Source of the DNA: Macrostomum lignano
Lineage: Eukaryota
Assembly (NCBI GenBank): GCA_002269645.1
Contig: NIVC01002092.1
Coordinates: 145,327 to 209,326, forward strand
Direction of reading: 5' to 3'
DNA length: 64,000 nucleotides
Shown here: piece by piece, positions 6,838 to 59,003 of the stretch
Position numbering within the stretch: the first letter of the stretch is position 1
Layout of the letters: each line of letters begins with the position of its first letter
The notes under the pieces: model-generated
Database searches by the model: none
Told to the model about the DNA's origin: nothing
Seen by the model: only the letters and a program-made list of their open reading frames with translations
Made by a program: the position numbers and the translations under genes

Positions 6838-6906
<69 letters not shown>
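6352..6906. repeat. Compound (GATA)n/(GACA)n microsatellite in a PTPN9 intron
   Basis: Direct inspection. Confidence 0.97.
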
Positions 6907-6908
<2 letters not shown>

Positions 6909-8025: not shown

Positions 8026-8202
8026 TAAGCGCGCATTTAAAATGCACGAGTCTGGCATAAGCGCGCGTTTAAAATGCACGAGTCTGGCATAAGCGCGCGT
8101 TTAAAATGCACGAGTCTGGCATAAGCGCGCGTTTAAAATGCACGAGTCTGGCATAAGCGCGCGTTTAAAATTCACGAGTCTGGCATAAGCGCGCATTTAA
8201 AA
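8026..8202. repeat. 32-bp tandem repeat (TAAGCGCGCGTTTAAAATGCACGAGTCTGGCA), about 5.5 copies
   Basis: Direct inspection. Confidence 0.9.
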
Positions 8203-8754: not shown

Positions 8755-8860
8755 CTCAATGGGGGAGTTGCTGAAATGCCATGGCTCAATGGGGGAGTTG
8801 CTGAGATGCCATGGATCAATGGGGGAGCTGCTGAAATGCCATGGCTCAATGGGGGAGTTG
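8755..8860. repeat. 30-bp tandem repeat (CTCAATGGGGGAGTTGCTGAAATGCCATGG), about 3.5 copies, just inside the intron after a PTPN9 donor
   Basis: Direct inspection. Confidence 0.88.
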
Positions 8861-8892
8861 AATATTAAAATCGAAGCCAGCTCGCGTCTCAC

Positions 8893-25083: not shown

Positions 25084-26766
25084 AAAGGAAGAGGAGGGGA
25101 GGAGAAAGAGGAAGGAGAGGAGGGAGAGGAGGGAGAGGAGGGAGAGGAGGGAGAGGAGGAATAGGAGAAAGAGGAAGGAGAGGAGGGAGAAGAGGGAGAG
25201 GAGGTAGAGGAGGGAGAGGAGGGAGAGGAGGGAGAGGAGGGAGAGGAGGAATAGGAGAAAGAGGAAGGAGAGGAGGGAGAGGAGGGAGAGGAGGGAGAGG
25301 AGGGAGAGGAGGGAGAGGAGGGAGAGGAAGGAGAGGAGGGAGTGGAGGGAGAGGATGGAGAGGAAAGAGAGGAAGGAGAGGAGGAGAGGAGGGAGAGGAG
25401 GGAGAGGAAGGAGAGGAGGGAGTGGAGGGAGAGGATGGAGAGGAAAGAGAGGAAGGAGAGGAGGGAGAGGAGGGAGAGGAAGGAGAGGAGTGAGAGGAAG
25501 GAGAGGAGGGAGATGAGGGAGAGGAGGGAGAGGAGGGAGAGGAGGGAGGAAGGGAGAGGAGGGAGAGGAGGGAGAGGAAGGAGAGGAGGGAGAGGAAGGA
25601 GAGGAGGGAGAGGAGGGAGAGGAGGGAGAGGAGGAAGAGGAGGGAGAGGAGGGAGAGGAGGGAGAGGAGGAAGAGGAGGGAGAGGAGGGAGAGGAGGGAG
25701 AGGAGGGAGAGGAAGGAGAGGAGGAAGAGGAGGGAGAGGAGGGAGAGAAAGGAGAGAAAGGAGAGGAGGGAGAGGAAGGAGAGGAAGGAGAGGAAGGAGA
25801 GGAAGGAGAGGAAGGAGAGGAGGGAGAGGAGGAATAGGAGGGAGAGGAAGGAGAGGAGGAAGAGGAGGGAGAGGAGGGAGAGGAAGGAGAGGAAGGAGAG
25901 GAAGGAGAGGAAGGAGAGGAAGGAGAGGAGGGAGAGGAGGGAGAGGAGGAAGAGGAGGGAGAGGAGGGAGAGGAGGGAGAGGAAGGAGAGGAGGGAGAGG
26001 AAGGAGAGGAAGGAGAGGAAGGAGAGGAAGGAGAGGAGGGAGAGGAAGGAGAGGAAGGAGAGGAAGGAGAGGAAGGAGAGGAAGGAGAGGAAGGAGAGGA
26101 AGGAGAGGAAGGAGAGGAAGGAGAGGAAGGAGAGGAGGCAGAGGAAGGAGAGGAGGAAGAGGAGGGAGAGGAAGGAGAGGAGGAAGAGGAGGGAGAGGAG
26201 GGAGAGGAAGGAGAGGAAGGAGAGAGGGAGAGGAAGGAGAGGAAGGAGAGGAAGGAGAGGAAGGAGAGGAGGCAGAGGAAGGAGAGGAAAGAGAGGAGGA
26301 AGAGGAGGGAGAGGAAGGAGAGGAGGAAGAGGAGGGAGAGGAGGAAGAGGAAGGAGAGGAAGGAGAGGAGTGAGAGGAAGGAGAGGAAGGAGAGGAAGGA
26401 GAGGAAGGAGAGGAGGGAGAGGAAGGAGAGGAGGAGAGGAGGGAGAGGAAGGAGAGGAAGGAGAGGAAGGAGAGGAAGGAGAGGAAGGAGAGGAAGGAGA
26501 GGAAGGAGAGGAAGGAGAGGAAGGAGAGGAGGGAGAGGAGGGAGAGGAAGGAGAGGAAGGAGAGGAAGGAGAGGAAGGAGAGGAAGGAGAGGAAGGAGAG
26601 GAAGGAGAGGAGGGAGGGAGAGGAGGAGGAGGAATAGGAGAAAGAGGAGAAAGAGGAAGGAGAGAAGGGAGAGGAGGGAGAGGAAGGAGAGGAAGGAGAG
26701 GAAGGAGAGGAGGGAGAGGAGGGAGAGGAGGGAGAGGAAGGAGAGGAGAAAGAGGAGGGAGAGGAG
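25084..26766. repeat. ~1.7-kb almost pure purine repeat (GAGGAGGGA/GAGGAAGGA 9-mers) in a TTLL10 intron
   Basis: Direct inspection. Confidence 0.97.
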
Positions 26767-26823
26767 ATATGACTAAGGGAGTTAAAAGTTTTCTCGTACG
26801 ATCGATTTCAAATGAAATTTTAC

Positions 26824-26836
26824 CTGCGGTTTGACC
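26824..26836 (-). CDS. TTLL10: Candidate 13-nt microexon of TTLL10 (GGTCAAACCGCAG)
   Basis: Flanked by tatAG and GTAAAA; lies 46 nt downstream of a GTGAAT donor. Inclusion gives ...FIFYSHGSNRSCRKML..., resembling the FYIGGSN motif I recall from vertebrate TTLL10. Confidence 0.5.
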
Positions 26837-27271: not shown

Positions 27272-29426
27272 CGAGTTTTCTTGTTTTCCGTGCGATTGAC
27301 TGTTATGTAGAAAGGCAACTGAGCCGAGCCGTCAACCGTGGCATCATCTCGACCTCTTGATCCAGCAGATTTCGACGAAAGCAGTGCAAGTAAAGCCTTG
27401 TAATTCGCTTGTACAAAACGACCCGCTGCGATGCTTAGCTTCCAATAGGCTTTCTTGCTGCAATTTACCAGTAAGAAGTATCGTAACTTGCCAACCATGT
27501 AGATTCTGTCGTTGCTTACTTGCATTTTGGTATCTTGCGAATCATCTTGACCGACCAGCTGTGCATTTAGCGGATACTGACAAGTTAGTATGAGTTAATC
27601 GGTTGTACACGTGAGTATTTATGCATTTTGCATACCCTGAAAATCTCTATGGCCTAATTATTTCACACAAACGTCCAAGTTTAAATTAAAATTGCAAAAG
27701 AATTGTATTGAATTTGTCATGCAGTCTTGTGGTACCTGCGATCGGGTCGGTCCCCTGCTCCATAGTGACTATAGTTTATAGCATACTGCCAGGCGTTGGG
27801 ACGCACAGAGTAAAAATTTAACTGCATGTTTATACTCATGCAGTTGTCCAAGGGCAAAAACTTAGCCTGGCACCGTGTGGTGTCGGGAAGTTTAACGACG
27901 TACGTGTTTGATCTATACATGTATTATAATAGTAGGTACAGGTAAGCTGATGTAGCTACTGTATCGGTAGCTGAACATACAATTGTATACAAATGAGTAC
28001 ACGCCATTGGACCGCACTCCTGTATGGCCGCAGACTGCAGTTCTGTCGAACCCTGAAAGAAACAACACCAAGACAATGCAGATTAATGAACTATATTTCT
28101 ACATGCATTGTAAATGCAGCGACGTGGCGTTTCATGCTTCTAGAAATATTTTGGGAATTAAGATCTGATTGCAAAATACGTGCATAATAGCTACCAAAGT
28201 TTAGCTTTAAGCTCGTAATAAGTCCTTCGAGTTACTCGTATAGCTGTGCAAATTTTTACGCTTCCGTCCGGGGACCAAAGTGTAGATAGAATAAAATAGA
28301 GCAGAATAAAAATATTTTTCAAAGCAAAAATCCTGAAAAATGGGGTATATTCACAATTTTACTGTTTTGAGGCCTAGAATTTAACTACTCGGGTCAAAAA
28401 TTTGCCTCAATATAGCTCGATCGTCTATATATCTACACGTGTTTGAATGCTTAAATCGAAGTAAATAATGTGACCTTTTCAAAACTTGTATAAGCGCAAT
28501 AAAGCTTGTTTTATTCTGCAGGACTTCTATGGATCGTTTTATTTCGTGACTTTTTACACATGCATTACAATTAAAAATTTTAAGGCACCTCACCTAGTTT
28601 CCGGTAGATTCCCCAATCACGTGTTTAGCAATTCATATTACGACTTTGCGATCGTTGTCACGGTATTTGTATTTTCTAAGAATCATTTTCATAAGCTGCC
28701 ATCGAACTCCAAAGTGCTCAGTAAAAGTGCTCTGAAAATGTGATAGAATTACTCATAGCTACTTCCTATGGCTATACCATACCCTATATTTTTTAGGCTA
28801 CAGAAACTATTTACACTACTATACATAGGTATAGCTAGCTGCTATGCAAATATGTATCATATTTTCAAAAGTCCAGCTTTACTTTTTCATTCTTTAGAGT
28901 CCCTATTTAAAAAAACTTTCTGATTGTTGAATAGTTGGGTTTTTGTTTTGCATCTTTGTTTCTTCATAATTTGGAATTGTATATATTCCAAGTTATTTTA
29001 TATTCAATTAACTTCTAGAAAACAGCCCTAGTCCAGCTAGCGTAACCTTGTTAAAAGAGGGATATTTTTATGCCTTACTTAATTTTTGTCACTATCATTA
29101 ATTATTACTTATTTATTATTTATACCTATATTATCGAGATTTTTAGATATTTTAAACTTTACAAATGCTAAATAATAATTTAGAAATTTGGATTTATTTT
29201 TACCTATTGACTTAAGAAACTTTAAATCATATAGCCTTTCTAACAAAAATTGTAACTATTTATTGCTTTTTTAAATCTAATTCTAGTTCTAAATCTAAAA
29301 TCATATTCATTCTACCAGTTAGTCAATAATTTTATAATTTCTTCTTTTTAAAGGTTAAAGCACAAGGACTATCAAAATTTATTCACAAGGCAAATGAATC
29401 AAATCAAATGTCTTCCATGCTTTCAG

Positions 29427-30011
29427 TTGTCTCCAATGCTTTCAACATCTGTGCCAGCAACTCATGCCAGTCTGCAGCAGCGCTCGCAGCAGCTGCAGCA
29501 GGAGAAGCAGCGCCTGATGCAGATGCTTGATGAGCGACTCACTGGTCTGTTAGACATCCTTGGCAACGACTCTGACAGCCAATCCCACCCAGTGCAGCAG
29601 CCGTCTCCATCGTCAGACGATTCGCCAAAGCAGTCAGCGGCAGCAGAAGCCAGCAAGGCTCGGCAGGATCTGCCAGAGAAAGAGTTCCGCCAGCGTTGCA
29701 GTCTGCTCACCGAATTATTCGAACTGTCCCATTTTCGCACCCTTCAAAACGTATTTATTGCCTTGATGTCGCTCTACGGTTTGAGCACTCTGATCTGCGA
29801 CACCATGGACGGCAAGTCCCTTGTTGACACCCTGTCGCTGCCGTTGCTGCGCTGGGCGTTCGGCCGTCTGCCCGATGCCATCGCAATCTGGATGGCGATG
29901 CACGCGGCGGTGCTGCTGGCAGCCTACCCAGCCTACCATCACTATGCCGCCGCGCCACCTGTCTCCAGGCGCTGGCGACTCGCCTGGTTGGCTTCGTACA
30001 TCGCTTTTCAG
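29427..30011 (+). CDS. SOAT1: Sterol O-acyltransferase (ACAT/SOAT, MBOAT family), exon 1 of the coding region (ATG at 29436)
   Basis: Acceptor tttcAG at 29426; donor TTT CAG|GTGGGT at 30012. Reads EKEFRQRCSLLTELFELSHFRTLQNVFIA. Confidence 0.85.
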
Positions 30012-30037
30012 GTGGGTCGTTTGTGTCAAATCCATGA

Positions 30038-30038
<1 letters not shown>

Positions 30039-30079
<41 letters not shown>

Positions 30080-30132
30080 GCAGTTAGTTAGCTAGCTAGC
30101 TAGCTAGCTAGCTAGTTAGTTAGTTAGTTAGT

Positions 30133-30172
<40 letters not shown>

Positions 30173-30174
30173 CC

Positions 30175-30213
<39 letters not shown>

Positions 30214-30242
30214 CAGTTAGTTAGTTAGTTAGTCAGTTAGCC

Positions 30243-30273
<31 letters not shown>

Positions 30274-30274
30274 C

Positions 30275-30356
<82 letters not shown>

Positions 30357-30385
30357 GTAGTTAGTTAGTTTGTTAGTTAGTTAGG

Positions 30386-30427
<42 letters not shown>

Positions 30428-30433
30428 GTTAGT

Positions 30434-30464
<31 letters not shown>

Positions 30465-30467
30465 TTG

Positions 30468-30512
<45 letters not shown>

Positions 30513-30513
30513 G

Positions 30514-30557
<44 letters not shown>

Positions 30558-30558
30558 C

Positions 30559-30604
<46 letters not shown>

Positions 30605-30611
30605 CTAGTTA

Positions 30612-30642
<31 letters not shown>

Positions 30643-30672
30643 CAGTTAGTTAGTTAGTTAGTTAGTTAGTTT

Positions 30673-30704
<32 letters not shown>
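30039..30704. repeat. (TTAG)n microsatellite in SOAT intron 1
   Basis: Direct inspection. Confidence 0.97.
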
Positions 30705-31035
30705 ATGTAACCTGTCCATACTTTTACTGCTGAGCAGCTCCGCTCCCAAACGATCTCGTAATAATCAAGCTTTTTTTGCAACCAAACCGATGTGCTTTTG
30801 TTAATATATTATTGTAAATAATATAACATATATTATTATTCTATTACAAACCTGAGCGTGGCACCGGTTTTGTTTTCGTCGTTGTAAGTGACCTTTAAAA
30901 TGCTAGTTGCGCTACTGTGGGCAGTAGCGTATTCAGAAAATGCGCAATTAAAGCTTTTGGGAAAGTGCTTTGACGATACAAGCAAACTCTGCAATACTTT
31001 ATTGTGAACTCTCCCACACTTGCAAAAAATTGCAG

Positions 31036-31265
31036 CTTGGCTTCCTCGTGCTGCCGCTGCGCTCCCTGCTCGCCGTCCAGCTGCCTCCGGCCTCCGCCAT
31101 CATAGTGCTCACCGAACAGAGTCGCCTAATGATGAAGCTGCACGCGTTCGTGTGGGAGAGCGCCAGCCGGGGCGGACCATGTCCGAGCTTTGGTCGCTTT
31201 CTCTACTTCCTGTTCGCGCCCACGCTGGTGTACAGGGATGCTTATCCGCAGGACAGGCCAACCAG
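31036..31265 (+). CDS. SOAT1: SOAT/ACAT exon 2
   Basis: ttgcAG|CTT acceptor; ACC AG|GTGAGA donor. Motifs LPPASAIIVLTEQSRLMMKLHAFV and FLYFLFAPTLVYRDAYP. Confidence 0.9.
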
Positions 31266-32004
31266 GTGAGATGGCTGTTTAAGATGCTGTGTACAGGATT
31301 CCGCAGCCAGCAGGAAGTTAACGCAAACCCCTATCAGGAAAATAAAAATCATAGTATGTCCTAGACAATGCATGACTCTAACAGCCCGGCGCGAATGTCA
31401 ACTGCTTCTTTAATTCACAAAAATTTTCTCCTCAGCTTCTGTCCAACAAATAATCCTGATTTGTTGGTGATCAGTTGTATTAACGACTCAGCAACTGTTG
31501 AAAAGGCTTTGATAATTCGTCAATAGTGCGACGTGACCATTCAATGGCTGCTTCTATCTCTTCGTCATCCATGGTGATGCCTTGCAATGTCCTAAGCCGC
31601 TGAAGGACTTATTTCAAACGGATGCTATGCTCTTCTAATGTCCTTCCCATCACAATGATATCATCGAGATAACGAGCCAGCTTCCCCTGTCAATCATTGC
31701 AGTACACTGTGCATTACATACTGGAAGGTCTTGAAGCAATGAAGAAAATTGTGACGCTTTTTTCGATCGACTCAAGACCATTTCAAACGAATGTTCTAAC
31801 GAAATCAACAAAACAATCTGTTTCACGGAGAGGATTTAAAAAAATATCTGTTTTACGATCTACTTTTTAAGGCCCGATATTAGGAGTCTAATATGGGCCA
31901 GCTAACAAAGGTCTCATTATCATCAATTTGAATAGAATTCTTAATAAATGCCTACTGTTGGGCTTCTATCACATTTATCCCATGTTTATGCCTATCCCGT
32001 CCAG

Positions 32005-32295
32005 GTGGCGCTACGTTGCCTCTAACCTGGGCCAGGTGGCCGGCTGCGCCCTGTTCGCCCACCTGCTGCTGGTCCGCTACTGCCTGCCTGTGTTCTCACA
32101 CTGGCGCCGGCCCAGCCTCGCACACTTCATCCACACAGTGTTCCAGTCTGCTTTGCCGGGCGGCCTAGTCCTGCTACTAGCCTTCTTCGCCGTGCTGCAC
32201 TCCTGGTTGAATGCGTTCGCCGAGATGTTGCGCTTCGGCGATCGGCAGTTCTATCGCGACTGGTGGAATGTCACCTCGTTTCGCAGCTGGTACAG
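32005..32295 (+). CDS. SOAT1: SOAT/ACAT exon 3
   Basis: gtccAG|G TGG acceptor; TAC AG|GTGAGA donor. Motif LHSWLNAFAEMLRFGDRQFYRDWWN. Confidence 0.92.
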
Positions 32296-32442
32296 GTGAG
32301 ACAGCTGTTTGGCGGGTGTCAGTTATATCTCAGGTGAGACTGCTGTTTGGCGGGTGTCAGTCAGTCTCAGGTGTCAGGTGCTAGTACGAGCAGCTACTAT
32401 CGCAACTATGAAGGCCAACTCTATGGCCCAACCCCCCCGCAG

Positions 32443-32833
32443 AACCTGGAACACAGTAGTGCATGATTGGCTGTACGCCTACGTGTACAGAGAGCTGTGC
32501 CTCCGCTTCGGCAAGCGGTCCAGTTCCCTAGCAACCGGCTGCGTGTTCCTGCTCTCCTCCCTATTTCATGAGTACATTTTGGCATTCAGCTTGGGCTTCT
32601 TCTTTCCGGCTCTGTTTGTCTTCTTCTGCGGCGCCGGGTTCGGTTTGATGTTCGCCAACGGGCGCTCCCGGTTCTGGTCCGTGTTCGTGTGGGCCAGCCT
32701 GTTCCTTGGCATGGGCGCTCTCATGTGCCTGTACAGCATGGAGTGGTTCGCCAGAAGGAACTGCCCCACAGCCTATCCTGGTCGGCCCGTTCTGGACTTC
32801 CTGGTGCCGCGATCGTTCACGTGTCCCATGTGA
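32443..32833 (+). CDS. SOAT1: SOAT/ACAT last exon
   Basis: ccgcAG|A ACC acceptor. Motifs RTWNTVVHDWLYAYVY and LFHEY (catalytic His). TGA at 32831-32833. Confidence 0.92.
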
Positions 32834-35074: not shown

Positions 35075-35614
35075 TTATTTGCCCCAGCCAGGGGCGGGAG
35101 CGCGCTTACCCCATCCGGGAGCGCGCTTACCCCATCCGGGAGCGCGCTTACCCCATCCGGGAGCGCGCTTACCCCATCCGGGAGCGCGCTTACCCCATCC
35201 GGGAGCGCGCTTACCCCATCCGGGAGCGCGCTTACCCCATCCGGGAGCGCGCTTACCCCATCCGGGAGCGCGCTTACCCCATCCGGGAGCGCGCTTACCC
35301 CATCCGGGAGCGCGCTTACCCCATCCGGGAGCGCGCTTACCCCATCCGGGAGCGCGCTTACCCCATCCGGGAGCGCGCTTGCCCCAACCGGGAGCGCGCT
35401 TACCCCAACCGGGAGCGCGCTTATCCCAGTAGGCAGCATCGCTATCATCCTCAACGGCATCATCGTCGTCCATCGACTTGTCGGCTATCATGGATTCCAA
35501 GTCGTCGTCGAGTTTGCGTTCTCGATCTGGGTTCTCGGCGCCAGCAGCTGCAACAATGACAGCGACCGCGACAATCAGCAATAGCAGCAATCGACTGGTT
35601 GCAAAGGCCGTCAT
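35075..35614 (-). CDS. APGWamide neuropeptide precursor (179 aa): signal peptide, acidic pro-region, 15 x APGW-GKR and a terminal APAPGW-GK
   Basis: ATG at 35614 (MTAFATSRLLLLLIVAVAVIVAAAG hydrophobic signal). KR-flanked APGWG units give amidated APGW-NH2. A 5'-UTR intron is likely (acceptor at 35659, GTAAAT donor near 35753). Confidence 0.93.
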   Translation of the reverse strand: MTAFATSRLLLLLIVAVAVIVAAAGAENPDRERKLDDDLESMIADKSMDDDDAVEDDSDAAYWDKRAPGWGKRAPGWGKRAPGWGKRAPGWGKRAPGWGKRAPGWGKRAPGWGKRAPGWGKRAPGWGKRAPGWGKRAPGWGKRAPGWGKRAPGWGKRAPGWGKRAPGWGKRAPAPGWGK

Positions 35615-39517: not shown

Positions 39518-40015
39518 GCATTTGAAAAGCTAATCGAATTGGGGTATCGGAATATCGCATTCAACCGATACTTTCATGTATCGCGTCTAACATTTATTTC
39601 TATTTCGGAGAATTGAAGCCCAATTGTTTTGTCAATGTGGATATTAAAATTTAACCACATTCAAAGTTCCGAAGCTACGTCTACTGACAATATTTTTTGC
39701 TAGTAATTATGTTTAACAGTATAAACTCTCAGCTCAGCTAACGCAGTAGTAAATAGTAGCTATTCTCATAAGAACCAACGCAATCTTAAAGATTCCTCAT
39801 AAAAGATGGTTGACATGCGGTTATTTTAAGAAACAATAAATAGTCATGCCCCAGGTCTCATTGCGCCGACCTGCGGAAACCTGATGCGGGCTCGGCGTCG
39901 AAAGTTATTAGGGGGTCCGACTGAGTGCAAATTCAACTGTCCAGTTTATTTGTTTAACACGACACATCTGTCATTTCTAATGCTGGTTCACGGTAGCGCA
40001 GATATTGCGTCTCTC

Positions 40016-40227
40016 TCAGGCGTTGTCAAACTCGACGCCCGCTTGGTCTCCGGAGGTGGTCGGTTCCGCAAAAATGGGACGAATCTCCCATTGGGAATAG
40101 CCGGCGTAGTCTGCGGCCGGTTCGCCGCCGTACCGCCGCTTGCCCCAGCCGATGGAACGGTGCGGCCGCTGCCGATGATGAAGCCGCTCGAGATGCTGGG
40201 CGACGGACCGGATAGTCACCGGAGTGC
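40016..40227 (-). CDS. Novel -GWamide prepropeptide, coding exon 2 (contains QRPHRSIGW-GKRR)
   Basis: Acceptor cttcAG|GC ACT at 40228 (phase 1) matches the phase-1 donor at 40948. Open to TGA at 40018-40016. Confidence 0.75.
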
Positions 40228-40408
40228 CTGAAGTTCAGAGACGCTCAGAGGTTGGCCTGTTCGACTCACAGCGCGTTGTGCCTGCCTGCAGTCAAAGTGC
40301 CCCCCCCGAGTTCCAATTCGTGCGCAGCTACATTGATTTGGAGCTCGTGCATGAAAACTCTCATTTAAATGAAGACCAATCGACAAGGCACAGAGAGTGA
40401 AATACGCG

Positions 40409-40820
40409 GGGGGCTACTGTGCTAGTCCATATACTAAAATACACAGGGGGCTACTGTGCTAGTCCATATACTAAAATACACAGGGGGCTACTGTGCTAGT
40501 CCATATACTAAAATACACAGGGGGCTACTGTGCTAGTCCATATACTAAAATACACAGGGGGCTACTGTGCTAGTCCATATACTAAAATACACAGGGGGCT
40601 ACTGTGCTAGTCCATATACTAAAATACACAGGGGGCTACTGTGCTAGTCCATATACTAAAATACACAGGGTGCTACTGTGCTAGTCCATATACTAAAATA
40701 CACAGGGGGCTACTGTACTAGTCCATATACTAAAATACACAGGGGGCTACTGTGCTAGTCATTATACTAAAATACACAGGGGGCTACTGTGCTAGTCCAT
40801 ATACTAAAATACACAGGGGG
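40409..40820. repeat. 37-bp minisatellite (GGGGGCTACTGTGCTAGTCCATATACTAAAATACACA), about 11 head-to-tail copies, intronic
   Basis: Direct inspection; no unique spacers. Confidence 0.95.
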
Positions 40821-40948
40821 GGGCTATACAGGCTTGATGATGAAGTAGTCAGGGTGGCTGTACACCCTGTGTGAGCGTGTGCCTGTGTGCTTTTCCATGT
40901 GCATGCTCCCTGTGGTAATTTTTTTTATTCAACCGAAAGAATACTCAC

Positions 40949-41018
40949 CTTCGCAGTCGGCGGCCAGAGCCAGGACCGCTGCACATGACAGCAGCAGGAG
41001 GAGACTGATCTTCGACAT
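40949..41018 (-). CDS. Novel -GWamide prepropeptide, coding exon 1 (signal peptide MSKISLLLLLSCAAVLALAADCE)
   Basis: ATG at 41018; classic hydrophobic signal sequence; consensus donor GAA G|GTGAGT. A 40-nt 5'-UTR intron is likely at 41272-41233. Confidence 0.75.
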
Positions 41019-41662: not shown

Positions 41663-42140
<478 letters not shown>

Positions 42141-51092: not shown

Positions 51093-51710
51093 CTGTACAG
51101 GCAGCTCTGTTTTCTCTTCTCACCCGATGCACTGCTGCGTACTGTAGGGAACTGAGTGGCTTGGAAGACTCACCGGTCATATTTTCTACAATTTCTACGC
51201 TTTCTTACACTGTATATTCCTTTCATCGGACATTTGCAGCAGACTCAACACTTGCGTTCAGGAAAGTCAGGAAGTAGGATTTTTGCCTCGGGCAGCTTAA
51301 TGCATGTCTTCCCGATCCCTACCCTCTGATGCCGCCGGTGCCCTCCTTCGCTGCATGTCTGGCAGTTCGCACTAAACAGATTCAACATTCATATTATTTT
51401 TTGATTTAAAGTTTGAGTTAGTTAGCTTTACCAAGATATTTTGTATCATGCTCTGATTAATAATATTTTTTCTACATTCTTCCTTAACCTTTTTCAACAA
51501 AAACTTTACTCCACAAATTTTAGTTATTGAACTATCTAAAAAATTCAATCAACTTTTTACTGATATCATTAAAACTCTGTAAGTTGTCAATTTAAAATTG
51601 GCTGCTGCAAGCACTTAGTGCCATGTAAATAAACACCTGATGATGGACAGGTAGCGCATCAAGTCTTGATAATTCTAGCATGAACTATCTAATGGCTAAG
51701 TGAGACTAAA

Positions 51711-52317
<607 letters not shown>

Positions 52318-52715
52318 GTGATGAATTCTGATTACGCGTGCGTCTTGCAAGAAAGCAGGAAAGCAAGTAATTAAAAGCTATTTGTCTTGTCAAGCAACTA
52401 CGACCGGTGTGTAACTGTATACATCTTCCTGTCGACGCCCTAAACAGTGTAAATAGAGACGAGTTTCAATATAGGCTTCACCCCCACACCCCATTCCCCC
52501 TTCCCACTCGGATCCTGATGGACCAATGAAGTTAGCTGGAAGTGAAAAAAACATGATTATGGTACTATATGAGGTCTACCATATACTTAGATGGGCCATA
52601 GACAAAACAGTTTCCTCAAAGTCGGTCTTTGATTATGCAGTTATGCGATTCTCAAAAATTAAAACTCTCTCTACAAAGCAACTATGGCCGCGATTGCTAA
52701 CAGTAGAAAGAGTAT

Positions 52716-55602
52716 GGGGGTGTATTTCAAATACACACATTTCCTTTGTCTCTATCTCCGAAAATATTCAACCACAGACATGAAAATCCAGAACACGGGC
52801 TAAAATTTTCCGCTCTATTCGATGAAGCAACTTCAAGAATCATGAAAAATCGGCATCGTCGAGATATTCAACGATTCTCCTCGGGGTGTCCGGTGGCACA
52901 AACCACCAACACTGGCAAAAATTTTCTGCTCAAAAAATCTCATCATGAAACCACGTCGGCTCGACAAACTATGCATATCAGTCGTAGAGGCCTTTGTTCC
53001 CAGGCACCAGGGTCCCTTCATCTCCGTCTGGGGCATCGGCGGCGACCGTCGGGACCTTCAACAAAAGCACCTAATCGGCGTCTCAGAGACGGCCTCGTTC
53101 CCAAAACTGAAATAAAAAAACCTCTTCTGCATGCAGCATTCAGTCATTAGACATAATCGGTGAATGAAATGTAGACATACAGGCGACCTTCGGGACCTTC
53201 AACGGAGTGCCACCACGCGGCCCTGACGAGCTGGCACCCCAACATCGTGACTTTTCTATCACGGCACCAAACCAGGCATGTCTGCATATTATACGAGTAC
53301 AATGGTCCTGCACCATGTTCAGCATTCAGCTCTGTCTGGACGACCTTCGGGACCTTCAACGGAGTGCTACCATGCGGCCCCGACGAGCTGGCACCCCCAA
53401 CATTGTGATTTTTCTATCAAGGCACCAAACCAGGCATGTCTGCATATTATACAATGCTTTTGCACCATGTTAAATTGGAGAGTTACAGATTTAACTGGCG
53501 ACTGAAAAATAAAATATATTTAATTTGTCAAAAATGATATTACAGCAGGTCAAAAATGATGTTACAGCATGTCAAAAATGATATTACGGCATGTCAAAAA
53601 TGATATTACGGCATGTCAAAAATTATATTACAGCAAATTCAGAGCAGAAGGATCTGAACACCGACACATAGACACAAAAGCGGAGTCAATTGTCACTATT
53701 TAATGTGGTGCACAACGTGCACAGTAATGGTGACTCACTGTCTCTTCCATCGCAGTGTGTCTTCGGCAAATTCCTTCGTCACACATGCAACACTTCCTTG
53801 ATGTCGCACTCAAGGCACGCTTCTCGTCCTTTGACTTTTGTCTCGCGCATGTTGCACAGGGCTTTCTGCCACCAACTGACACCACACAGCCGCCGCTTCA
53901 CGTGCCTGTTCCTTCATTTGCTCGTCGTTGATTTGACAACCTGCGAGCTGGAACAGTCGGTGATGACTGTTCAGCCGGTGATGATCGGACAGATTCTGAA
54001 GAAGAGCGGCCGATTGCGAGCGCTCCTCGATCAGAGGTTGCAGAAGTTGCGCAGCTGCCTTGCGCTGGAACTCGTTGCGATAGTTCGGCGAGGCGCAGAG
54101 CTCCGGGTGCGCCAGTCTCCAGATAGCAGCGGCATTCACAGCTGCTATGTTGAGTATGCCGCCGGAGAAGATTGCCTTCTCGCATGAGTCGGACTTTCGC
54201 TTGCAGTCGGATGTGCGGAACATCCTGTTGCAGGTGTTCGTGCCAATCTTGGTAGAATTTTAGTACGTGCCTATTACTACAGGCTTGCCATTGGGAAGCA
54301 GTTGTCTGTCGTGGTGTATGGTGGACAGCAACATCACGTTTCGGCCCGCCTTGGGGCAATAGGACACACGTGAGCTCCTCAGAAAACTGGAATTCGCTCG
54401 TGTGTGGAGCCATGGTTTGAGTTGAATTCTTGAGATCGGCTGGCAGGCCACCACAAGTGCGCATCACTGTTCCCTTGGTCAGCTGAGCATCGGATTCCTG
54501 TGATGCAAAAGTAGTGACAGCAGTGTTCCTTTGCCAGTGAAGATTTCCGCACTGAACACATAGCGGATGTCCATGTCATTCTGAATCTCTGGATTCCCAG
54601 CCGATGTCAGCAGGAACAGCTTGGCACCATTGCGACAGGGCTTCTCCTTCAGAAAGACCGTGAAGTCACAGTCCACACCCGAGTAGACAACCAGAGTTTC
54701 GTCGACGCAGAGGTACGGCCCGGGAAGGACAGGATGGCGCAGCTGACTGACAAAGGTGTCGGATGCCGTAGAGCTTGTCCGTTGTGGCAGTCCGCTGACG
54801 ATGTTCGGTAGTTTCGAATTTAGCATGGTGCAGGACCATTGTATAATATGCAGACATGCCTGGTTTGGTGTCTAGATAGAAAAATCACAATGTTGGGGGT
54901 GCCAGCTCATCAGGGCCGCGTGGTGGCACTCTGTTGAAGGTCCCGAAAGTCGTCCAGACAGAGCTGAATGCTGAACATGGTGCAGGACCATTGTATAATA
55001 TGCAGACATGCCTGGTTTGGTGTCTAGATAGAAAAATCACGATGTTGGGGGTGCCAGCTCGTCGGGGCCGCGTGGTGGCACTCCGTTGAAGGTCCCGAAG
55101 GTCGCCCGTATGTCTACAGGTCAGCCTCGAAGGTCGCTATCGTCCATTTCATTAACCGATTATGTCTACTGACTGAATGCTGCATGCAGAAGAGGTTCCT
55201 TTTATTTCAGTTTTGGGAACGCAGCCGTCTCTGAGATGCGGATCAGGTGCTTTTGTTGAAGGTCCCGACGGTCACCGCCGATGCTCCAGACGGTGATGAA
55301 GGTGACTCTGGTGCCTAGGATGCTGAGAACAAAGGCTTCTGCGACAGATGGACCCAGATTTTTGAGCCAATATGGATATACCATAAAGGGTTATACAGTG
55401 TAGTGTTGGTTGTCCTTGCCACCAGTGTCTTAGACAAGAATCGTTGAATATCTCGACGATGCTGACGTCGGATGACTTTGAAAGTTAGTTCGTCGGAAAG
55501 GGCGAAAAATTTTGATCTACACGGTAGACTTTTTTACGAAAATCGGTAATTCGGTTTGCGAGATATCGTGAAATGGGTCGTGTGTATTTGTAATACACCC
55601 CC
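52716..55602. mobile_element. Long-TIR (foldback-like) DNA element 1; arms ~52716-53476 and ~54817-55602
   Basis: The arms are reverse complements, each with two tandem ~155-bp subrepeats. Termini GGGGTGTATTTCAAATACAC and GTGTATTTGTAATACACCCC. Confidence 0.8.
53700..54816 (-). pseudogene. piggyBac transposase pseudogene fragment (frameshifted, internally deleted) inside long-TIR element 1
   Basis: PGPYLCVDETLV (first catalytic Asp), KP.R.GAKLF, RNVMLLSTIH, KPVVI..Y..TKIGTN (third Asp motif GGVD degenerate), GILNIAAVNA and a C-terminal Cys-rich domain CATC...CCMC..GICRRH. The segment with the second Asp is missing. Confidence 0.85.
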
Positions 55603-56980
55603 GTGGTCTTTCCCCATGGGGAAAATAGCGTGGTCTTTCTACTGTTAATTGTTCTATAGGTACTTTAAAACTCTTCTGATTAGCATTAGCAGCAACTTCA
55701 CTTGTCAGTCCAGCAGGTACCATGGCAACGTTAGCCTGTTGAGACTGGCAGACAAGCAATGATTCACTTGTCTTGATGTTACCGCATTGCAAAGCGTTAG
55801 AGGCCGATCGGATCGTGTTACTGGACGAGCCAATGTAGCACTCGAGAGCTGCAGAAGTGTTCCCGGTAATTCTACTTATTTCGACTCGCTCGAGGCGGGC
55901 GTCTCGCAGAGATGTAGTGCAAGTCTTTCTTAGTGTTTGATTAGTGTAGCGGTCACAATCGGGTGTCGGTAATCCAGCAGTTACTGTCCTAACAACAGAG
56001 TCAATGGTATGTCGACCGAAAGCCTGATTTTGATACCATCTACCTCTCTTCACGGCGTCCTCGATACCAGTTGAGAAACAGATTAGGCTTATTACAGATC
56101 TGTGGTCTCATTTCGACATACTTCTTGTACAAGCACACAGTGCAGTACCGATGGTCAACCGTATGATAGATGCGCCCGGTCTTTAAGGGTCTGTTGCAGG
56201 TCTTCAATCCACATTGGCAAGTCTTGGAGACGTTTGTCTCCATAAACTGCAGGCACTCCTCCCCAGCTTCAAATCCAATGTTGATTTGCCGCTCGAACTC
56301 CAGTTGGTGAAGCTCTCTTCCACCCCGTAGGCCGAACGCTTTGCCCAGCGTAAAAATAACAGTGTACAGCAGTTGCTTGGGATTGGAATCTCCAAGAATG
56401 TCCTGCTCCCATAATGACATCTCCTCGGCAGTGCCAAGTGCAATAGTCGGCTTTGTTAGATTAAGCTGTTGCCTTCGCGGGCAGTCTCCCTCATGGCAGA
56501 ATCTAATGCTGAACGGGTAGCAACAAACGACGAGTCTGTCGAAATACTGAATGTCCTTTTCAGCACATGCTGGAAATAATGCTGAATCATTGTGATGATA
56601 TCCTTCAACGAACCAGGTTTAAATTTCTGACCGTCAACCTTCCGGACTTCAAACACAAAGTACTGCAGCAACTCGTTAAGATCACCAGCTGACATCTCTT
56701 CAATTGATTTTATGACCATCAGTCCAGGTTTCCTGCCTTCCAGTTGGGCTTGCAGGCGAGAAGCCTTCCAGGCTTCAAAAATTTTGACGGCCCAGCCTCG
56801 CTTCGCGATTGTAGCTCTAGGGATCCCATCGTCTAGATAACGTTGTAAATCTTCTGCACTAGGAATCTTTCCAAACGGTCTCGCCGATAAGCCTAGGTTG
56901 TCGGCACTTTTACTCGAAGTGGAAGATGTCTGCGCAAAGTCCAATTCCGCAAAGAATGCGTCAAATTCGAAGTCGTCCAT
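55603..56980 (-). mobile_element. Crypton-like tyrosine recombinase (CryptonA/DUF3504 type) copy 1, broken into three frames
   Basis: WAVKIFEAW, LQYFVFEVRKVDGQKFKPGSL, LWEQDILGDSNPKQL, GLRGGRE, CTVCLYKKY, YTNQTLRKT, ITGNTS and ECY. Frameshifts near 56460 and 56045. Confidence 0.82.
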
Positions 56981-57436
56981 ATCGAAATATTGCTTGATAA
57001 TGAATTATATTAGATTTACAAGTACAAGCAAGCTGATACTTACAAGCTGCAAGCAATGCTCATCTGCGTGCCCTGTAAACCTATCTGAATTCATTGGGAT
57101 TTGTCTTTGGTTTTTGGCGTGTATTAAGTTTACATACTATATACGCTTTAAAATATAGTCGCTTCGCTCGCCTCGAGACCATTGTCGCTAGTCAGTGCTT
57201 TTAGATAATGTTTTGTGTATGGTAAAAACTGTCGCAACTTTGATTTCACTTTATAGCCTGTGGTTCTAGCGTCACTTCTGGATAATGTCCTTGAGTTCTG
57301 GATAATGTCCACGACTTGTGGATAATGTCCACGACTTGTGGATAATGTCCGCAATTTATTTAGAAAACAGCATACCACACAGTAACAATAAAATTCAATA
57401 CAACAATGCACAGTAACAAAAAGGTAACAAAAAACA

Positions 57437-59003
57437 CTAGGAAATACTCTTGAAATTTTGGCATATAGTGTCAGTTGCCCATAAATTCTCACAGACTGCA
57501 TTGGTTGAACGTGCAGTTTTGCATAACGAAATGTTCTTGCCATTTGGATGAGCGTTTGCGAAGTTGACCGCCTCCTGGACCGTTGAGCTCTGGTTGTTGA
57601 CTGGGCACACGCTCGTGTTGATTGCTGGGCTATCTGTTGTACTGGCTGATGGGCACGCGCTCGTAATAACATGGCCATTTGAATCAGGTGTAGTAGTGTT
57701 TTTCTCCATGTCCAGTACCTTGGTTACGGCGTCGCTGCACTTCTTTAGCACCTTGTCACGTCTGATTGAGAGATATCGGCGAACGGTTTTTTCGCACTTC
57801 TGGCCAGTTATCGCCATGATGTCGGCCATGGAATGCCCAGCTGCTTCTAAGTCGCACACACCCGCTGACTCTAAAATATTAGGCAAACGGTATTACACAA
57901 TTGTAAGCATCTTGAGGCATTGCCTAAAGGCTAAATTAAGCTACACCTTTGGCAAAGGAGATTTACCTGATGCAGTGGTTGGTGTAAACTTTGGATAGCT
58001 TGGCCTTCCCACTCAGCGTCTTCATAAAGTTGTTGAGATAGTTTACGCCTCTCTTCTGCTTAGCACAAAACCGCCGTGCTCCAGTCGGCGAATTTCTTAG
58101 CGGTCTTGGGAACAGAGAATTGTCCTTGGTTTCACCAGGCAGGAGAGACAAATACTCATCTATAATTGCTGTGTCATATATACTGGCCTGCTTGATTTCG
58201 ACGTCTCTTTTGGCTTTCGCCGGATCAGCTGTCCTGTTCTTGGTCTTCGACGATGATAGTGCGTAGTACATCCTTCCGTCTGAGTCGCTTTTCTTCTCTA
58301 ACCAATCCTTTGTCTCCAAGCTCGCAAGGTGCTCTCTGCCTCGTTCTCCCAGTCCGTACAGCAGCCGAAACAGCATCTCGTCCTGTGTAACTTCGGCAGT
58401 TGAGCGGTCAAAGTAAAGACGCAGCTTTTGCATGTCTCCTTCCTCAATTGGAGGAAACGGTCTAACCTGACCTCCTGAGGATTGCCACTCACGGGTTTTG
58501 AACCGCAGTAGACGATTAGCTCCGGAAAATTCTTCTCCGCTAAGAATGTTAATGTTGAGTCCCGCAATCATTGTCAAATAGCGTTGGATTCCAGCACGTA
58601 TGCAGACTAGGCTTGACGGCGAATAGCTGCCTCCGTCAGCGCGTCGTAGTTTGAAATAGAAATACCTCAGAAACTCTGCCAGCGTGGCAGTAGTCAATTC
58701 GTGCACGGCTGCTCCATGCTCAGCTAGAAAGTTGACAAAACTTGAGCCGTATGCCAACATCTGCTCCCGAGTCTTGCTCGGCAAACTTGCAACTTCTTCG
58801 CGTGCCATCGTTTCAGTTATATCGAGCGGCACTGCCGGTCCTTCGGTCATGCATGAGACTTCTTCCACGTCTTCATTTTCATCCGGTAGCAACGGCAATT
58901 CGTCACTTGCTCCTCCCTCTTCGATGTACTTGATAAATGTGGCTAGGTCTTCGTCGGCTGCGAAGTCGTTTCCCGAAGTCGATAGCATTGAAATAAAATC
59001 CAT
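57437..59003 (-). mobile_element. Crypton-like tyrosine recombinase copy 2 (different family), 346-codon ORF plus a probable 96-nt intron and a C-terminal exon
   Basis: FLRYFYFKLRRADGGSYSPSSL...IQRYL, GERGRE, YTNHCIR (HxxR), donor AG|GTAAAT at 57966, acceptor ttttAG at 57871, then GHSMADIMAITGQKCEKTVRRY (catalytic Tyr). Confidence 0.82.

What the first reader, a model, noticed from the sequence alone, without database searches (positions are those of the whole stretch)
40016..41018. Hidden two-exon neuropeptide precursor encoding a possible GnRH/corazonin-like peptide pQRPHRSIGW-amide
Seen: splicing 41018-40949 to 40227-40016 gives a 93-aa protein MSKISLLLLLSCAAVLALAADCEG-TPVTIRSVAQHLERLHHR-QRPHRSIGW-GKRR-YGGEPAADY...DNA*. 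It has a signal peptide, an amidation Gly, a basic cleavage site and an acidic tail. The ORF track misses it because the signal peptide is on a separate exon. Known: molluscan GnRH/corazonin-type peptides begin pQNYHFSNGW, and AKH/RPCH peptides end in GW-amide. Inference: cleavage after the Arg before Gln gives pQ-R-P-H-R-S-I-G-W-NH2, identical to pQNYHFSNGW at 5 of 9 positions (Q,H,S,G,W). Caveats: the conserved aromatic residue is Arg here, and the peptide does not directly follow the signal peptide as it does in typical GnRH-family precursors. A shorter SIGW-amide, parallel to APGW-amide, is an equally possible product.
Basis: partly seen in the sequence, partly recalled or inferred. Interest (0 to 1): 0.8.

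Follow-up and report, generated by a model that had tools for sequence, protein, structure and literature searches.

The report
Orphan flatworm Trp-amide prohormone gene
This is a real, transcribed two-exon gene of the flatworm Macrostomum lignano that looks like a small hormone precursor ending in ...SIGW-amide, but it is not a GnRH/corazonin gene, is already in GenBank as a "hypothetical protein", and sits next to the worm's APGWamide neuropeptide gene.

Summary
Splicing 41018-40949 to 40227-40016 (minus strand, GT..AG, phase 1) gives exactly the 93-aa protein described. The window is Macrostomum lignano. The same 93-aa protein, over the same 1003-nt span, is already deposited as "hypothetical protein BOX15_Mlig012517g1" in an annotation built from RNA-seq transcripts. 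So the gene is uncharacterised, not hidden.

The GnRH/corazonin reading is not supported. In 30 of 30 family precursors the Gln directly follows the signal peptide, the core is Q-x-aromatic-H/Q-aromatic-S-x-x-W, two residues separate Trp from the amidating Gly, and the tail contains Cys. The candidate meets none of these. It scores -2.0 bits against a family profile, the same as its own shuffled controls. The 5/9 identity is expected by chance in 18-37% of random peptides once Q, G and W are fixed.

No relative was found in two searches of libraries holding billions of proteins. The best reading is a lineage-restricted amidated-peptide prohormone. A 16-copy APGWamide precursor lies 4.4 kb downstream on the same strand; paralogy between the two is unproven. 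Interest is modest.

The parts
40949..41018 (-). Exon 1 CDS: Met1 to the first base of codon 24. It encodes MSKISLLLLLSCAAVLALA|ADCE. The phase-1 donor is G|GTGAGT.
   Evidence: In-frame TGA at -15. GC 0.61.
40962..41018 (-). Predicted signal peptide, residues 1-19. It has a Lys3 n-region and an h-region ISLLLLLSCAAVLALA. The likely cleavage is A-L-A|A by the -3/-1 rule.
   Evidence: The best 10-residue Kyte-Doolittle window scores 2.85, within the 2.38-3.83 range of 29 bona fide GnRH/corazonin signal peptides. The cleavage position is inferred. SignalP was not available.
40228..40948 (-). Single intron, 721 nt, GT..AG, phase 1. It contains a 37-bp tandem array at 40400-40820.
   Evidence: The array has 9 core copies here and 14 in the duplicate locus L002. 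GC is 0.46.
40016..40227 (-). Exon 2 CDS, from the rest of codon 24 to the TGA stop. It encodes GTPVTIRSVAQHLERLHHRQRPHRSIGWGKRRYGG...FDNA*.
   Evidence: GC is 0.65. It is identical in L002 except for one 1-nt deletion.
40145..40171 (-). Codons 43-51, QRPHRSIGW.
   Evidence: Coordinates derived (Trp codon starts at 40147). The upstream site H-H-R42|Q has P4=Leu, P6=Glu and P8=His, with Arg at P5.
40145..40156 (-). Codons 48-51, SIGW. This is the favoured mature peptide (SIGW-NH2), preceded by R-P-H-R47.
   Evidence: P4=Arg and P6=Arg at this site only. It aligns with APGW in the neighbouring repeat unit. Processing is inferred, not observed.
40133..40144 (-). Codons 52-55, G-K-R-R. Gly52 is the amide donor, followed by a tribasic convertase site.
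   Evidence: W-G-[KR][KR] occurs 16 times in the six-frame translation of the window: 15 in the APGW gene and once here.
40019..40132 (-). Codons 56-93, the acidic C-terminal peptide YGGEPAADY...VEFDNA. It has no Cys and no basic cleavage site.
   Evidence: It is frameshifted by a 1-nt deletion in the duplicate copy (P0002).
39945..39950 (-). AATAAA polyadenylation signal, 65 nt after the stop codon.
   Evidence: Its function is inferred from sequence only.
35075..35614 (-). Neighbouring gene: an APGWamide precursor of 179 aa, with its own signal peptide and an acidic spacer. It carries 15 x KR-APGW-GKR plus a terminal APAPGWGK. It provides context and is a possible paralogue.
   Evidence: It is called as a 193-aa gene in duplicate locus L002 but not annotated at this locus.

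Best explanation
The locus is a genuine Macrostomum lignano gene (GenBank BOX15_Mlig012517g1) encoding a 93-aa secretory pre-pro-protein. It is best read as a lineage-restricted peptide prohormone.

Proposed mechanism:
1. Shown from sequence: the signal peptide, residues 1-19, sits on exon 1.
2. Inferred: the 74-aa pro-protein enters the regulated secretory pathway. A prohormone convertase cuts at K53-R54-R55. Carboxypeptidase trims the basic residues. Peptidylglycine alpha-amidating monooxygenase converts Gly52 into a C-terminal amide on Trp51. M. lignano has an essential pc2 homologue whose in situ pattern suggests nervous-system expression (PMC4490696).
3. Inferred: the N-terminal boundary is most likely R-P-H-R47|S, an R-X-X-R site, giving SIGW-NH2. 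That is a structural analogue of the APGW-NH2 encoded 16 times by the next gene downstream. Less likely products are pQRPHRSIGW-NH2 (cut at R42) or an uncut 32-residue amidated peptide.
4. Inferred: a short Trp-amide would most plausibly act on a GPCR of the protostome RFamide/Wamide receptor expansion that contains the RGWamide/APGWamide receptor.

It is not a member of the GnRH/corazonin/AKH family.
For: - Gene reality: exact identity and an identical span to a transcript-derived GenBank model. A second model skips the same intron. The splice sites are canonical, the exons are GC3-rich and a polyA signal follows.
- Prohormone features: a hydrophobic N-terminus in the range of true neuropeptide signal peptides, a W-G-K-R-R site, and small size.
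- Processing-site logic: only R47 has Arg at P4 and P6. Mass spectrometry in other spiralians confirmed monobasic cuts at Arg with a second basic residue 3-6 positions upstream (PMC8557429).
- Link to APGWamide: R47-SIGW-GKR-xxG aligns 7/11 with the R-APGW-GKR-APG unit of the neighbour.
- Lineage restriction: there are no relatives beyond M. lignano copies among 5.8 billion clustered proteins or in an exhaustive HMMER scan of 1.84 billion representatives.
- Against GnRH membership.
Against: - There is no direct evidence of neuronal or endocrine expression, of processing, or of the peptide itself.
- The gene ID was absent from the supplements of three M. lignano expression papers (files may be truncated).
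- There is a single amidation site and no conserved relatives, so selective constraint cannot be shown. The only other copy is 97-99% identical across coding and non-coding DNA alike.
- A G-[KR][KR] triplet in a 74-aa His/Arg-rich secreted protein could be incidental, with a rough own estimate of a few percent to 10%.
- R42 also fits the looser spiralian monobasic rule (Arg38 at P5), so the N-terminal boundary is unresolved.
Confidence: 0.6

Rival explanations
1. A divergent GnRH/corazonin/AKH-superfamily prohormone yields pQRPHRSIGW-NH2 by monobasic cleavage after Arg42 and cyclisation of Gln43. The peptide acts on a GnRH- or corazonin-type receptor.
For: - Ungapped identity is 5/9 with the correct spacing of Q1, H4, S6, G8 and W9 to mollusc pQNYHFSNGW, and 5/9 to sea-urchin pQVHHRFSGW.
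- It has C-terminal amidation and a basic site.
- A profile search that recovers 30 GnRH/corazonin precursors found no canonical one named as M. lignano, so the canonical slot is not demonstrably filled.
- Arg38 at P5 makes R42 cleavage possible under the loose spiralian rule.
Against: - In 30 of 30 family precursors the Gln follows the signal peptide. It lies 2-8 residues after the hydrophobic core and is never preceded by K or R. Here it lies 26 residues after the core and follows Arg.
- There is no aromatic residue at positions 3-5, whereas 21 of 22 family peptides have one. Net charge is +2.
- Trp is followed directly by the amidating Gly, not by two residues.
- The tail has no Cys, whereas 30 of 30 family members have at least one.
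- The profile score is -2.0 bits, equal to shuffled controls and to the APGW precursor.
- The interior matches are expected by chance in 18-37% of random peptides.
- Planarian grh-1 keeps the canonical form.
Confidence: 0.06
2. The gene is a tandem-duplicate derivative of the adjacent APGWamide gene. It would be a divergent single-copy member of the APGWamide/RGWamide family whose one remaining unit drifted from KR-APGW-GKR to HR-SIGW-GKR. It would signal through the same or a duplicated APGWamide/RGWamide-type receptor.
For: - The two genes share a strand and lie 4.4 kb apart. The pair is kept together in the duplicate locus L002.
- The unit alignment R-xxGW-GKR-xxG matches 7/11.
- Both precursors run signal peptide, spacer, basic site, xxGW-GKR.
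- W-G-[KR][KR] occurs nowhere else in the six-frame translation of 64 kb.
- Planarian cpp-1 shows that flatworm APGW-type peptides vary at positions 1-2 (VPGW, TPGW).
Against: - There is no nucleotide similarity between the loci above chance (best E = 0.16).
- Outside the 11-residue unit the proteins do not align meaningfully.
- The family-defining features from trochozoans are all absent: multiple copies, two C-terminal Cys residues 20-30 aa apart, and a phase-0 intron between them (PMC8557429). The neighbouring M. lignano APGW gene itself also lacks the Cys tail.
- Pro at position 2 of the tetrapeptide, present in APGW, VPGW and TPGW, is replaced by Ile.
- Adjacency of two W-amide genes could be coincidence.
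Confidence: 0.2
3. The product is not a hormone. It is a small, fast-evolving, lineage-specific secreted protein, for example a gland or seminal-fluid product or a cationic His/Arg-rich antimicrobial peptide. The G-K-R-R motif would then be incidental or a simple furin-type maturation site.
For: - It is an orphan with no homologues anywhere.
- It has a single putative peptide and no repeated units.
- The N-terminal pro-region is His/Arg-rich.
- The tail tolerates a frameshift in one genomic copy.
- There are no expression data tying it to neurons.
Against: - An aromatic residue followed by Gly and a tribasic site, plus an R-X-X-R site four residues upstream, is the classic layout of an amidated tetrapeptide.
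- It matches the unit of the bona fide neuropeptide gene next door.
- It has no Cys framework or recognisable domain.
Confidence: 0.17

Closest known systems
APGWamide / RGWamide family (mollusc APGWamide, annelid RGWamide, planarian cpp-1 V/TPGWamide, and the M. lignano APGWamide gene at 35075-35614)
   Same: - Both have a tetrapeptide ending in Gly-Trp followed by Gly-Lys-Arg, with an Arg immediately upstream.
- Both are secretory precursors with a spacer between the signal peptide and the first peptide.
- The candidate lies next to a true family member on the same strand.
   Different: - It has a single copy, not 3-16.
- The upstream site is R-X-X-R, not Lys-Arg.
- The tetrapeptide starts Ser-Ile, not Ala/Val/Thr-Pro or x-Arg.
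[quoted passage not shown] Its one intron is phase 1 and sits after the signal peptide.
- No similarity is detectable beyond the 11-residue unit.
Protostome GnRH/corazonin-type precursors (mollusc pQNYHFSNGW..., arthropod pQTFQYSRGWTN-NH2, Schmidtea grh-1 QSYHFSNDWLP)
   Same: - A hypothetical pGlu-started peptide has Q1, H4, S6, G8 and W9 in register (5/9).
- It has an amidation Gly and a basic site.
- It is a single-copy peptide followed by an 'associated peptide'.
   Different: - The peptide is not adjacent to the signal peptide.
- It is preceded by Arg, not by a signal-peptidase site.
- It has no aromatic residues at positions 3 and 5.
- Trp is C-terminal, not followed by two residues.
- The tail has no Cys.
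- The profile score is at background.
AKH / RPCH (e.g. Dm-AKH pQLTFSPDW-NH2; RPCH pQLNFSPGW-NH2, the latter quoted from memory)
   Same: It would be a Trp-amide, or near-Trp-amide, C-terminus on a short pGlu peptide, with GW-amide as in RPCH.
   Different: - The AKH hallmarks are 8-10 residues, Phe/Tyr at position 4 and Trp at position 8, directly after the signal peptide.
- Here position 4 is His, position 8 is Gly and position 9 is Trp.
- Ungapped identity to 9 AKH/ACP peptides is 1-2 of 9.
Myoinhibitory peptide / allatostatin-B (W-X6-W-amide)
   Same: It has a C-terminal Trp-amide and would plausibly use the same protostome RFamide/Wamide receptor expansion (PMC8557429).
   Different: It has no second Trp seven residues upstream (RQRPHRSIGW), and it is single copy.

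Membership tests
GnRH/corazonin-type prohormone | The mature peptide starts with Gln immediately after the signal-peptide cleavage site. | tested here: not met
   In 29 of 29 N-complete family precursors the Gln lies 2-8 residues after the hydrophobic core. In all 30, the residue at -1 is A, G, S, T, C or P, and never K or R. In the candidate, Gln43 lies 26 residues after the core and follows Arg42.
GnRH/corazonin-type prohormone | The core is Q-x-[Y/F/I]-[H/Q]-[F/Y]-S-x-x-W, with aromatic residues at positions 3 and 5. | tested here: not met
   The motif is absent: position 3 is Pro and position 5 is Arg. 21 of 22 family peptides have F or Y at positions 3-5.
GnRH/corazonin-type prohormone | Trp9 is followed by 2-3 further residues before the amidating Gly. 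| tested here: not met
   All 30 family members have W-x-x-G(G)-[KR]2-3. The candidate has W-G-K-R-R.
GnRH/corazonin-type prohormone | A Gly amide donor plus a di- or tribasic cleavage site follows the peptide. | tested here: met
   G52-K53-R54-R55.
GnRH/corazonin-type prohormone | The associated peptide contains Cys. | tested here: not met
   All 30 have at least 1 Cys and 20 have at least 2 (several are truncated). The candidate tail has none.
GnRH/corazonin-type prohormone | Similarity to a family profile is significant. | tested here: not met
   The candidate scores -2.0 bits and only GW..GKR aligns. The scored interior-shuffled controls average -2.0 bits (115 of the 200 made were reported), and 20 of them score at least as high as the candidate. 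Planarian grh-1 scores 34.9 bits but belongs to the training set. Database hits score 32-91 bits.
GnRH/corazonin-type prohormone | The peptide activates a GnRH- or corazonin-type GPCR. | not testable with these tools
   This needs a receptor assay.
AKH/RPCH | The peptide is 8-10 residues, starts with pGlu directly after the signal peptide, and has Phe/Tyr at position 4 and Trp at position 8. | tested here: not met
   Position 4 is His, position 8 is Gly and position 9 is Trp. Identity to 9 AKH/ACP peptides is 1-2 of 9. The position in the precursor is as.
APGWamide/RGWamide | The N-terminal part of the precursor holds multiple tandem peptide copies. | tested here: not met
   there is one W-G-K-R site. 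The neighbouring true APGW gene has 16 copies. Feature definition from PMC8557429.
APGWamide/RGWamide | A short xxGW or RGW peptide is flanked by basic cleavage sites and a Gly amide donor. | tested here: inconclusive
   The sequence R-P-H-R|S-I-G-W-G-K-R-R fits the form. The upstream site is monobasic (R-X-X-R) and cleavage is unverified. Pro2 or Arg2 is replaced by Ile.
APGWamide/RGWamide | There are two Cys residues 20-30 aa apart at the precursor C-terminus. | tested here: not met
   no Cys after the peptide. The M. lignano APGW precursor itself also has 0 Cys, so this trochozoan feature may not apply in flatworms.
APGWamide/RGWamide | A single phase-0 intron lies between the exons encoding the two Cys residues. 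| tested here: not met
   the only intron is phase 1 and lies directly after the signal-peptide exon.
APGWamide/RGWamide | The peptide activates an RGWamide/APGWamide-type receptor. | not testable with these tools
   This needs a receptor assay.
MIP/allatostatin-B | The peptide has the W-X6-W-amide motif and is usually multi-copy. | tested here: not met
   there is no Trp upstream of Trp51 in the pro-region, and the peptide is single copy.
Generic amidated neuropeptide prohormone (kind, not family) | It has an N-terminal signal peptide. | tested here: met
   Heuristic only. The hydrophobic core scores 2.85, within the 2.38-3.83 range of true precursors. An A-L-A|A site is present. SignalP was not available.
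Generic amidated neuropeptide prohormone (kind, not family) | It is a transcribed, small precursor with a Gly-dibasic processing site. | tested here: met
   for the transcript-derived model. for the site.
Generic amidated neuropeptide prohormone (kind, not family) | It is expressed in neurons or endocrine cells and the processed peptide can be detected. | not testable with these tools
   No expression or peptidomic record was found.

The most novel reading that the evidence does not exclude
SIGW-amide (or pQRPHRSIGW-amide) is a previously unrecognised flatworm Trp-amide signalling peptide. Its gene arose beside the APGWamide gene. The linked pair would then be a living example of how a multi-copy tetrapeptide gene spawns a single-copy, N-terminally extendable 'Q....S.GW-amide' peptide. 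That transition is what the contested APGWamide-to-RPCH/AKH/GnRH hypothesis requires (PMC10730642).
Probability: 0.07. Interest if true: 0.6.

Novelty: new member of a known kind. Interest (0 to 1): 0.3.

Why it matters
If the peptide is made, it adds a lineage-specific Trp-amide neuropeptide to a regenerative and sexual-selection model flatworm. I found no neuropeptide catalogue for that species in the held literature. It would also give a two-gene W-amide locus (SIGW + APGW) in which ligand birth and receptor co-option can be studied by RNAi, transgenesis and receptor assays.

The negative result is still useful. Flatworm GnRH/corazonin peptides, where known, are canonical, so weak Q...S.GW look-alikes should not be annotated as such.

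Practically, the GenBank entry could be re-labelled from "hypothetical protein" to "putative amidated-peptide prohormone". The APGWamide gene at this locus, missing from the deposited annotation, should be added.

Tried and rejected
1. Pfam scan of the 93-aa protein gave only a sub-threshold INCA1 hit (13.5 bits against a cut-off of 27). I treated it as noise.
2. Rfam on the whole window found nothing.
3. The exhaustive HMMER scan gave two marginal hits, P0004 and P0005 (E = 3e-4 and 7e-4). Both are long internally repetitive proteins whose scores sum several weak repeat matches, and neither has prohormone architecture. Rejected.
4. The single-sequence search with planarian grh-1, meant to find an M. 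lignano GnRH, returned only itself and was uninformative. The profile version found 30 family members but none named as M. lignano. This is inconclusive, because the word prefilter passed only 31 candidates.
5. The duplicate locus L002 cannot show selective constraint. Exons, UTRs and 400 nt upstream are identical, and the flanks are 92-99% identical.
6. DNA-level paralogy with the APGW locus gave nothing above chance.
7. Literature searches for 'SIGWamide', 'Mlig012517', and Macrostomum with GnRH, corazonin or APGWamide found no description of this gene or peptide. McVeigh 2009 (PMC2749192) is not held. I did not locate Koziol 2016 in the library, so prior listing as an 'npp' gene cannot be excluded.
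8. The gene ID is absent from the supplements of three expression papers. The supplement of the polyclad single-cell atlas (Piovani et al. 2023) holds no sequences.
9. I did not attempt structure prediction. A 74-aa cleavable pro-peptide with no homologues would give no usable model.
Full report
**What is in the sequence.** On the minus strand, 41018..40949 reads ATG...GAA G|GTGAGT, and 40227..40016 follows ...CTTCAG|. The intron is phase 1, 721 nt long and GT..AG. It holds a 37-bp x 11.4 tandem array at 40400-40820. The start codon has an in-frame TGA 15 nt upstream. The exons are 61-65% GC with GC3 of 73%, the intron is 46% and the window 43%. An AATAAA sits 65 nt after the stop codon.

**Whose gene it is, and whether it is hidden.** The protein is 100% identical over its full length to NCBI [quoted passage not shown]. 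The encoding contig, NIVC01002092.1 of GCA_002269645.1, equals window 30016-51018 base for base. The deposited gene span of 1003 nt is exactly the finding's coordinates. That GenBank annotation was made from RNA-seq-derived transcripts (StringTie/TACO plus a de novo assembly), with ORFs from TransDecoder (PMC5730564). The splice junction therefore has transcript-level support, although I saw no read counts. A second gene model from another assembly (UniRef A0A1I8FP53, P0003) is frame-garbled. It maps only to the 5'UTR, exon 1 and exon 2, with nothing in the intron. So the gene is real and already catalogued. What is missing is any functional label. No paper in the held library mentions the gene ID or a "SIGWamide".

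**Relatives.** The word-indexed search of 5.8 billion protein clusters returned only M. lignano copies. An exhaustive HMMER scan of 1.84 billion representatives returned the protein itself plus two marginal hits. Those hits are long repetitive proteins with summed weak repeat matches, and I rejected them. Pfam gives nothing. A second genomic copy (L002; product P0002) is identical in its exons, UTRs and 400 nt upstream, apart from one 1-nt deletion that frameshifts the C-terminal tail. Its flanks are 92-99% identical, and its intron repeat has 14 core copies against 9 here. This matches the known large-scale duplication in the DV1 assembly and carries no information on constraint. The gene is an orphan in everything searchable here. 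Transcriptomes of other Macrostomum species are probably not in these databases.

**Testing the GnRH/corazonin reading.** The 5/9 identity to pQNYHFSNGW is arithmetically right. However, Q1 is fixed by the choice of cleavage site, and G8 and W9 by the choice of a GW-amide peptide. With those fixed, two or more interior matches to any of 13 published family peptides (PMC5592718; Smed-grh-1) occur in 18% of random peptides drawn from the pro-protein's composition. With the local His/Arg-rich composition the figure is 37%.

I built a 14-column profile from 11 published GnRH/corazonin cores. The candidate scores -2.0 bits, with only GW..GKR aligned. That equals the mean of the interior-shuffled controls that were scored (115 of the 200 made), and 20 of those score as high or higher. 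The APGW precursor scores -3.2. Planarian grh-1 scores 34.9, but it is in the training set.

The same kind of profile, run database-wide, recovered 30 precursors from molluscs, an insect and the planarian at 32-91 bits. I used them to measure the family's architecture:
- Gln sits 2-8 residues after the hydrophobic core in all 29 N-complete sequences.
- The residue before Gln is A, G, S, T, C or P in all 30, and never basic.
- Trp is always followed by two residues before G(G)-[KR]2-3.
- The associated peptide always contains Cys.

The candidate fails all four. Gln43 lies 26 residues after the core and is preceded by Arg. Trp is followed directly by Gly. The tail has no Cys. It also lacks the aromatic residues at positions 3-5 that 21 of 22 family peptides have, and it carries net charge +2. 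The AKH hallmarks (Phe/Tyr at position 4, Trp at position 8) are not met either.

The one flatworm GnRH-type gene I could read, Schmidtea grh-1, is fully canonical, with QSYHFSNDWLP-GKR right after the signal peptide. Polyclads are also reported to have GnRH/corazonin peptides (PMC13551398). I could not show that M. lignano has a canonical gene: none of the 30 hits is named as M. lignano, and the prefilter passed only 31 candidates. A highly derived paralogue therefore cannot be strictly excluded, but nothing positive supports it.

**What it more likely is.** The N-terminus has Lys3, a 16-residue hydrophobic stretch and A-L-A|A. Its hydrophobicity (2.85) lies within the range of the 29 true signal peptides (2.38-3.83). 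W51-G-K-R-R is a textbook amidation and convertase site. W-G-[KR][KR] occurs 16 times in the six-frame translation of the 64-kb window: once here and 15 times in one other gene.

Among the single-Arg sites upstream, only R47 (R-P-H-R|S) has basic residues at P4 and P6. R42 (H-H-R|Q) has Leu at P4 and Glu at P6, with only His at P8 and Arg at P5. R44 and R73 precede Pro, and R38 precedes Leu. Mass spectrometry in nemerteans and brachiopods confirmed monobasic cuts at Arg with a second basic residue 3-6 positions upstream (PMC8557429). Under that looser rule both R47 and R42 qualify. Under the stricter P4/P6/P8 rule, which I state from established knowledge of prohormone processing (Devi; Veenstra), R47 is clearly best.

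So the favoured product is the tetrapeptide SIGW-NH2. The alternatives are pQRPHRSIGW-NH2 and an uncut 32-residue amidated peptide. M. lignano has an essential pc2 homologue whose in situ pattern suggests nervous-system expression (PMC4490696), so the processing machinery is there. All processing steps are inferred.

**The neighbour.** The other 15 W-G-K-R sites belong to an ORF at 35614..35075 on the same strand, whose start lies 4.4 kb downstream of the candidate's stop codon. It encodes a 179-aa precursor with its own signal peptide (MTAFATSRLLLLLIVAVAVIVAAAGA) and an acidic spacer, then 15 x KR-APGW-GKR and a terminal APAPGWGK. This is an APGWamide gene, the flatworm counterpart of mollusc APGWamide, annelid RGWamide and planarian cpp-1. 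It is not annotated at this locus in GenBank, although a 193-aa version is annotated in the duplicate locus. The deposited annotation excluded transcripts overlapping repeat annotations, which may explain the gap.

The candidate's R47-SIGW-GKR-RYG aligns 7/11 with R-APGW-GKR-APG. That places R47 on the P1 Arg of the APGW unit.

It does not prove paralogy:
- The two loci share no DNA similarity above chance (best E = 0.16).
- The proteins do not align outside the unit.
- The trochozoan family hallmarks are absent: multiple copies, two C-terminal Cys residues, and a phase-0 intron between them. The M. lignano APGW gene also lacks the Cys tail.

**Mechanism proposed.** The pre-pro-protein undergoes signal-peptide removal, then a convertase cut at KRR and probably at RPHR. 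Carboxypeptidase trimming and amidation of Trp51 via Gly52 follow, and a short Trp-amide is secreted. It would most plausibly act on a GPCR of the protostome RFamide/Wamide expansion that includes the RGWamide/APGWamide receptor (PMC8557429). Shown here: gene structure, transcript-derived model, motifs and neighbourhood. Inferred: secretion, every cleavage, amidation, receptor class and cell type.

**Verdict.** This is a new, uncharacterised member of a very well known kind, a small amidated-peptide precursor. It is lineage-restricted as far as can be seen. Interest is modest, raised a little by the physical linkage to the APGWamide gene.

Noticed in passing
window 35075-35614 (-); promoter-like TATAAA at 35876-35871; putative 5'UTR intron 35740-35659: A complete APGWamide neuropeptide precursor: 179 aa, with its own signal peptide, 15 x KR-APGW-GKR and a terminal APAPGWGK. 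It has no Cys and no C-terminal domain. It is not annotated at this locus in GenBank, although a 193-aa version (two more copies) is annotated in the duplicate locus L002 at 15996-16577.
   Followed up: partly
window 40949 (exon-1 donor) and 35658 (first base after the APGW-gene acceptor): The candidate's exon-1 donor and the acceptor in front of the APGW coding exon are both phase 1. A splice between them would be in frame, giving MSKIS...ADCE-ANNTSTSKGRVVLQT-MTAF.... This has a one-in-three chance by accident, and no transcript evidence was seen. M. lignano does make multi-gene transcriptional units (PMC5730564).
   Followed up: partly
L002 exon 2 (product P0002), corresponding to about window 40066: The duplicate copy carries a 1-nt deletion (GAACCGACC to GAA-CGACC). 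It frameshifts the C-terminal tail after ...PIFAE and extends the protein to 102 aa. This is either an assembly indel or evidence that the tail is dispensable. The peptide region is untouched.
   Followed up: yes
window 40400-40820: The intronic 37-bp tandem array is 97% self-identical. Its core-copy number differs between the two genomic copies (9 and 14).
   Followed up: yes
window 41663-42105, 6074-6914, 51689-52393: Long (AGAC)n-type microsatellites generate spurious 150-280-aa 'CLSVCLSV...' or 'YLSIYLSI...' ORFs in the mechanical ORF list.
   Followed up: no
window 25342-26834 (+): A purine-rich GGA/GAA-type simple repeat gives spurious 'RGGRGRRG...' and 'EEGEEGEE...' ORFs of up to 343 aa.
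   Followed up: no
window 4685-9198 (-): Exons encode a CRAL/TRIO domain (8698-9198) and a protein-tyrosine-phosphatase domain (4685-6333). This is the PTPN9/PTP-MEG2-type architecture.
   Followed up: partly
window 55517-59003 (-): A cluster of long intron-less ORFs, two of which have QRICH1-domain hits (56456-56980 at E = 2e-8; 57963-59003 at E = 3e-4). They look like tandem or duplicated copies of a mobile-element-derived gene. From memory, QRICH1-type domains are associated with Crypton-like tyrosine-recombinase elements.
   Followed up: no
window 21876-22736 (-) and 29394-32833 (+): These are ordinary neighbours: exons of a tubulin-tyrosine-ligase-family gene and of an MBOAT-family O-acyltransferase. 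The latter is annotated in GenBank as a 498-aa product.
   Followed up: partly
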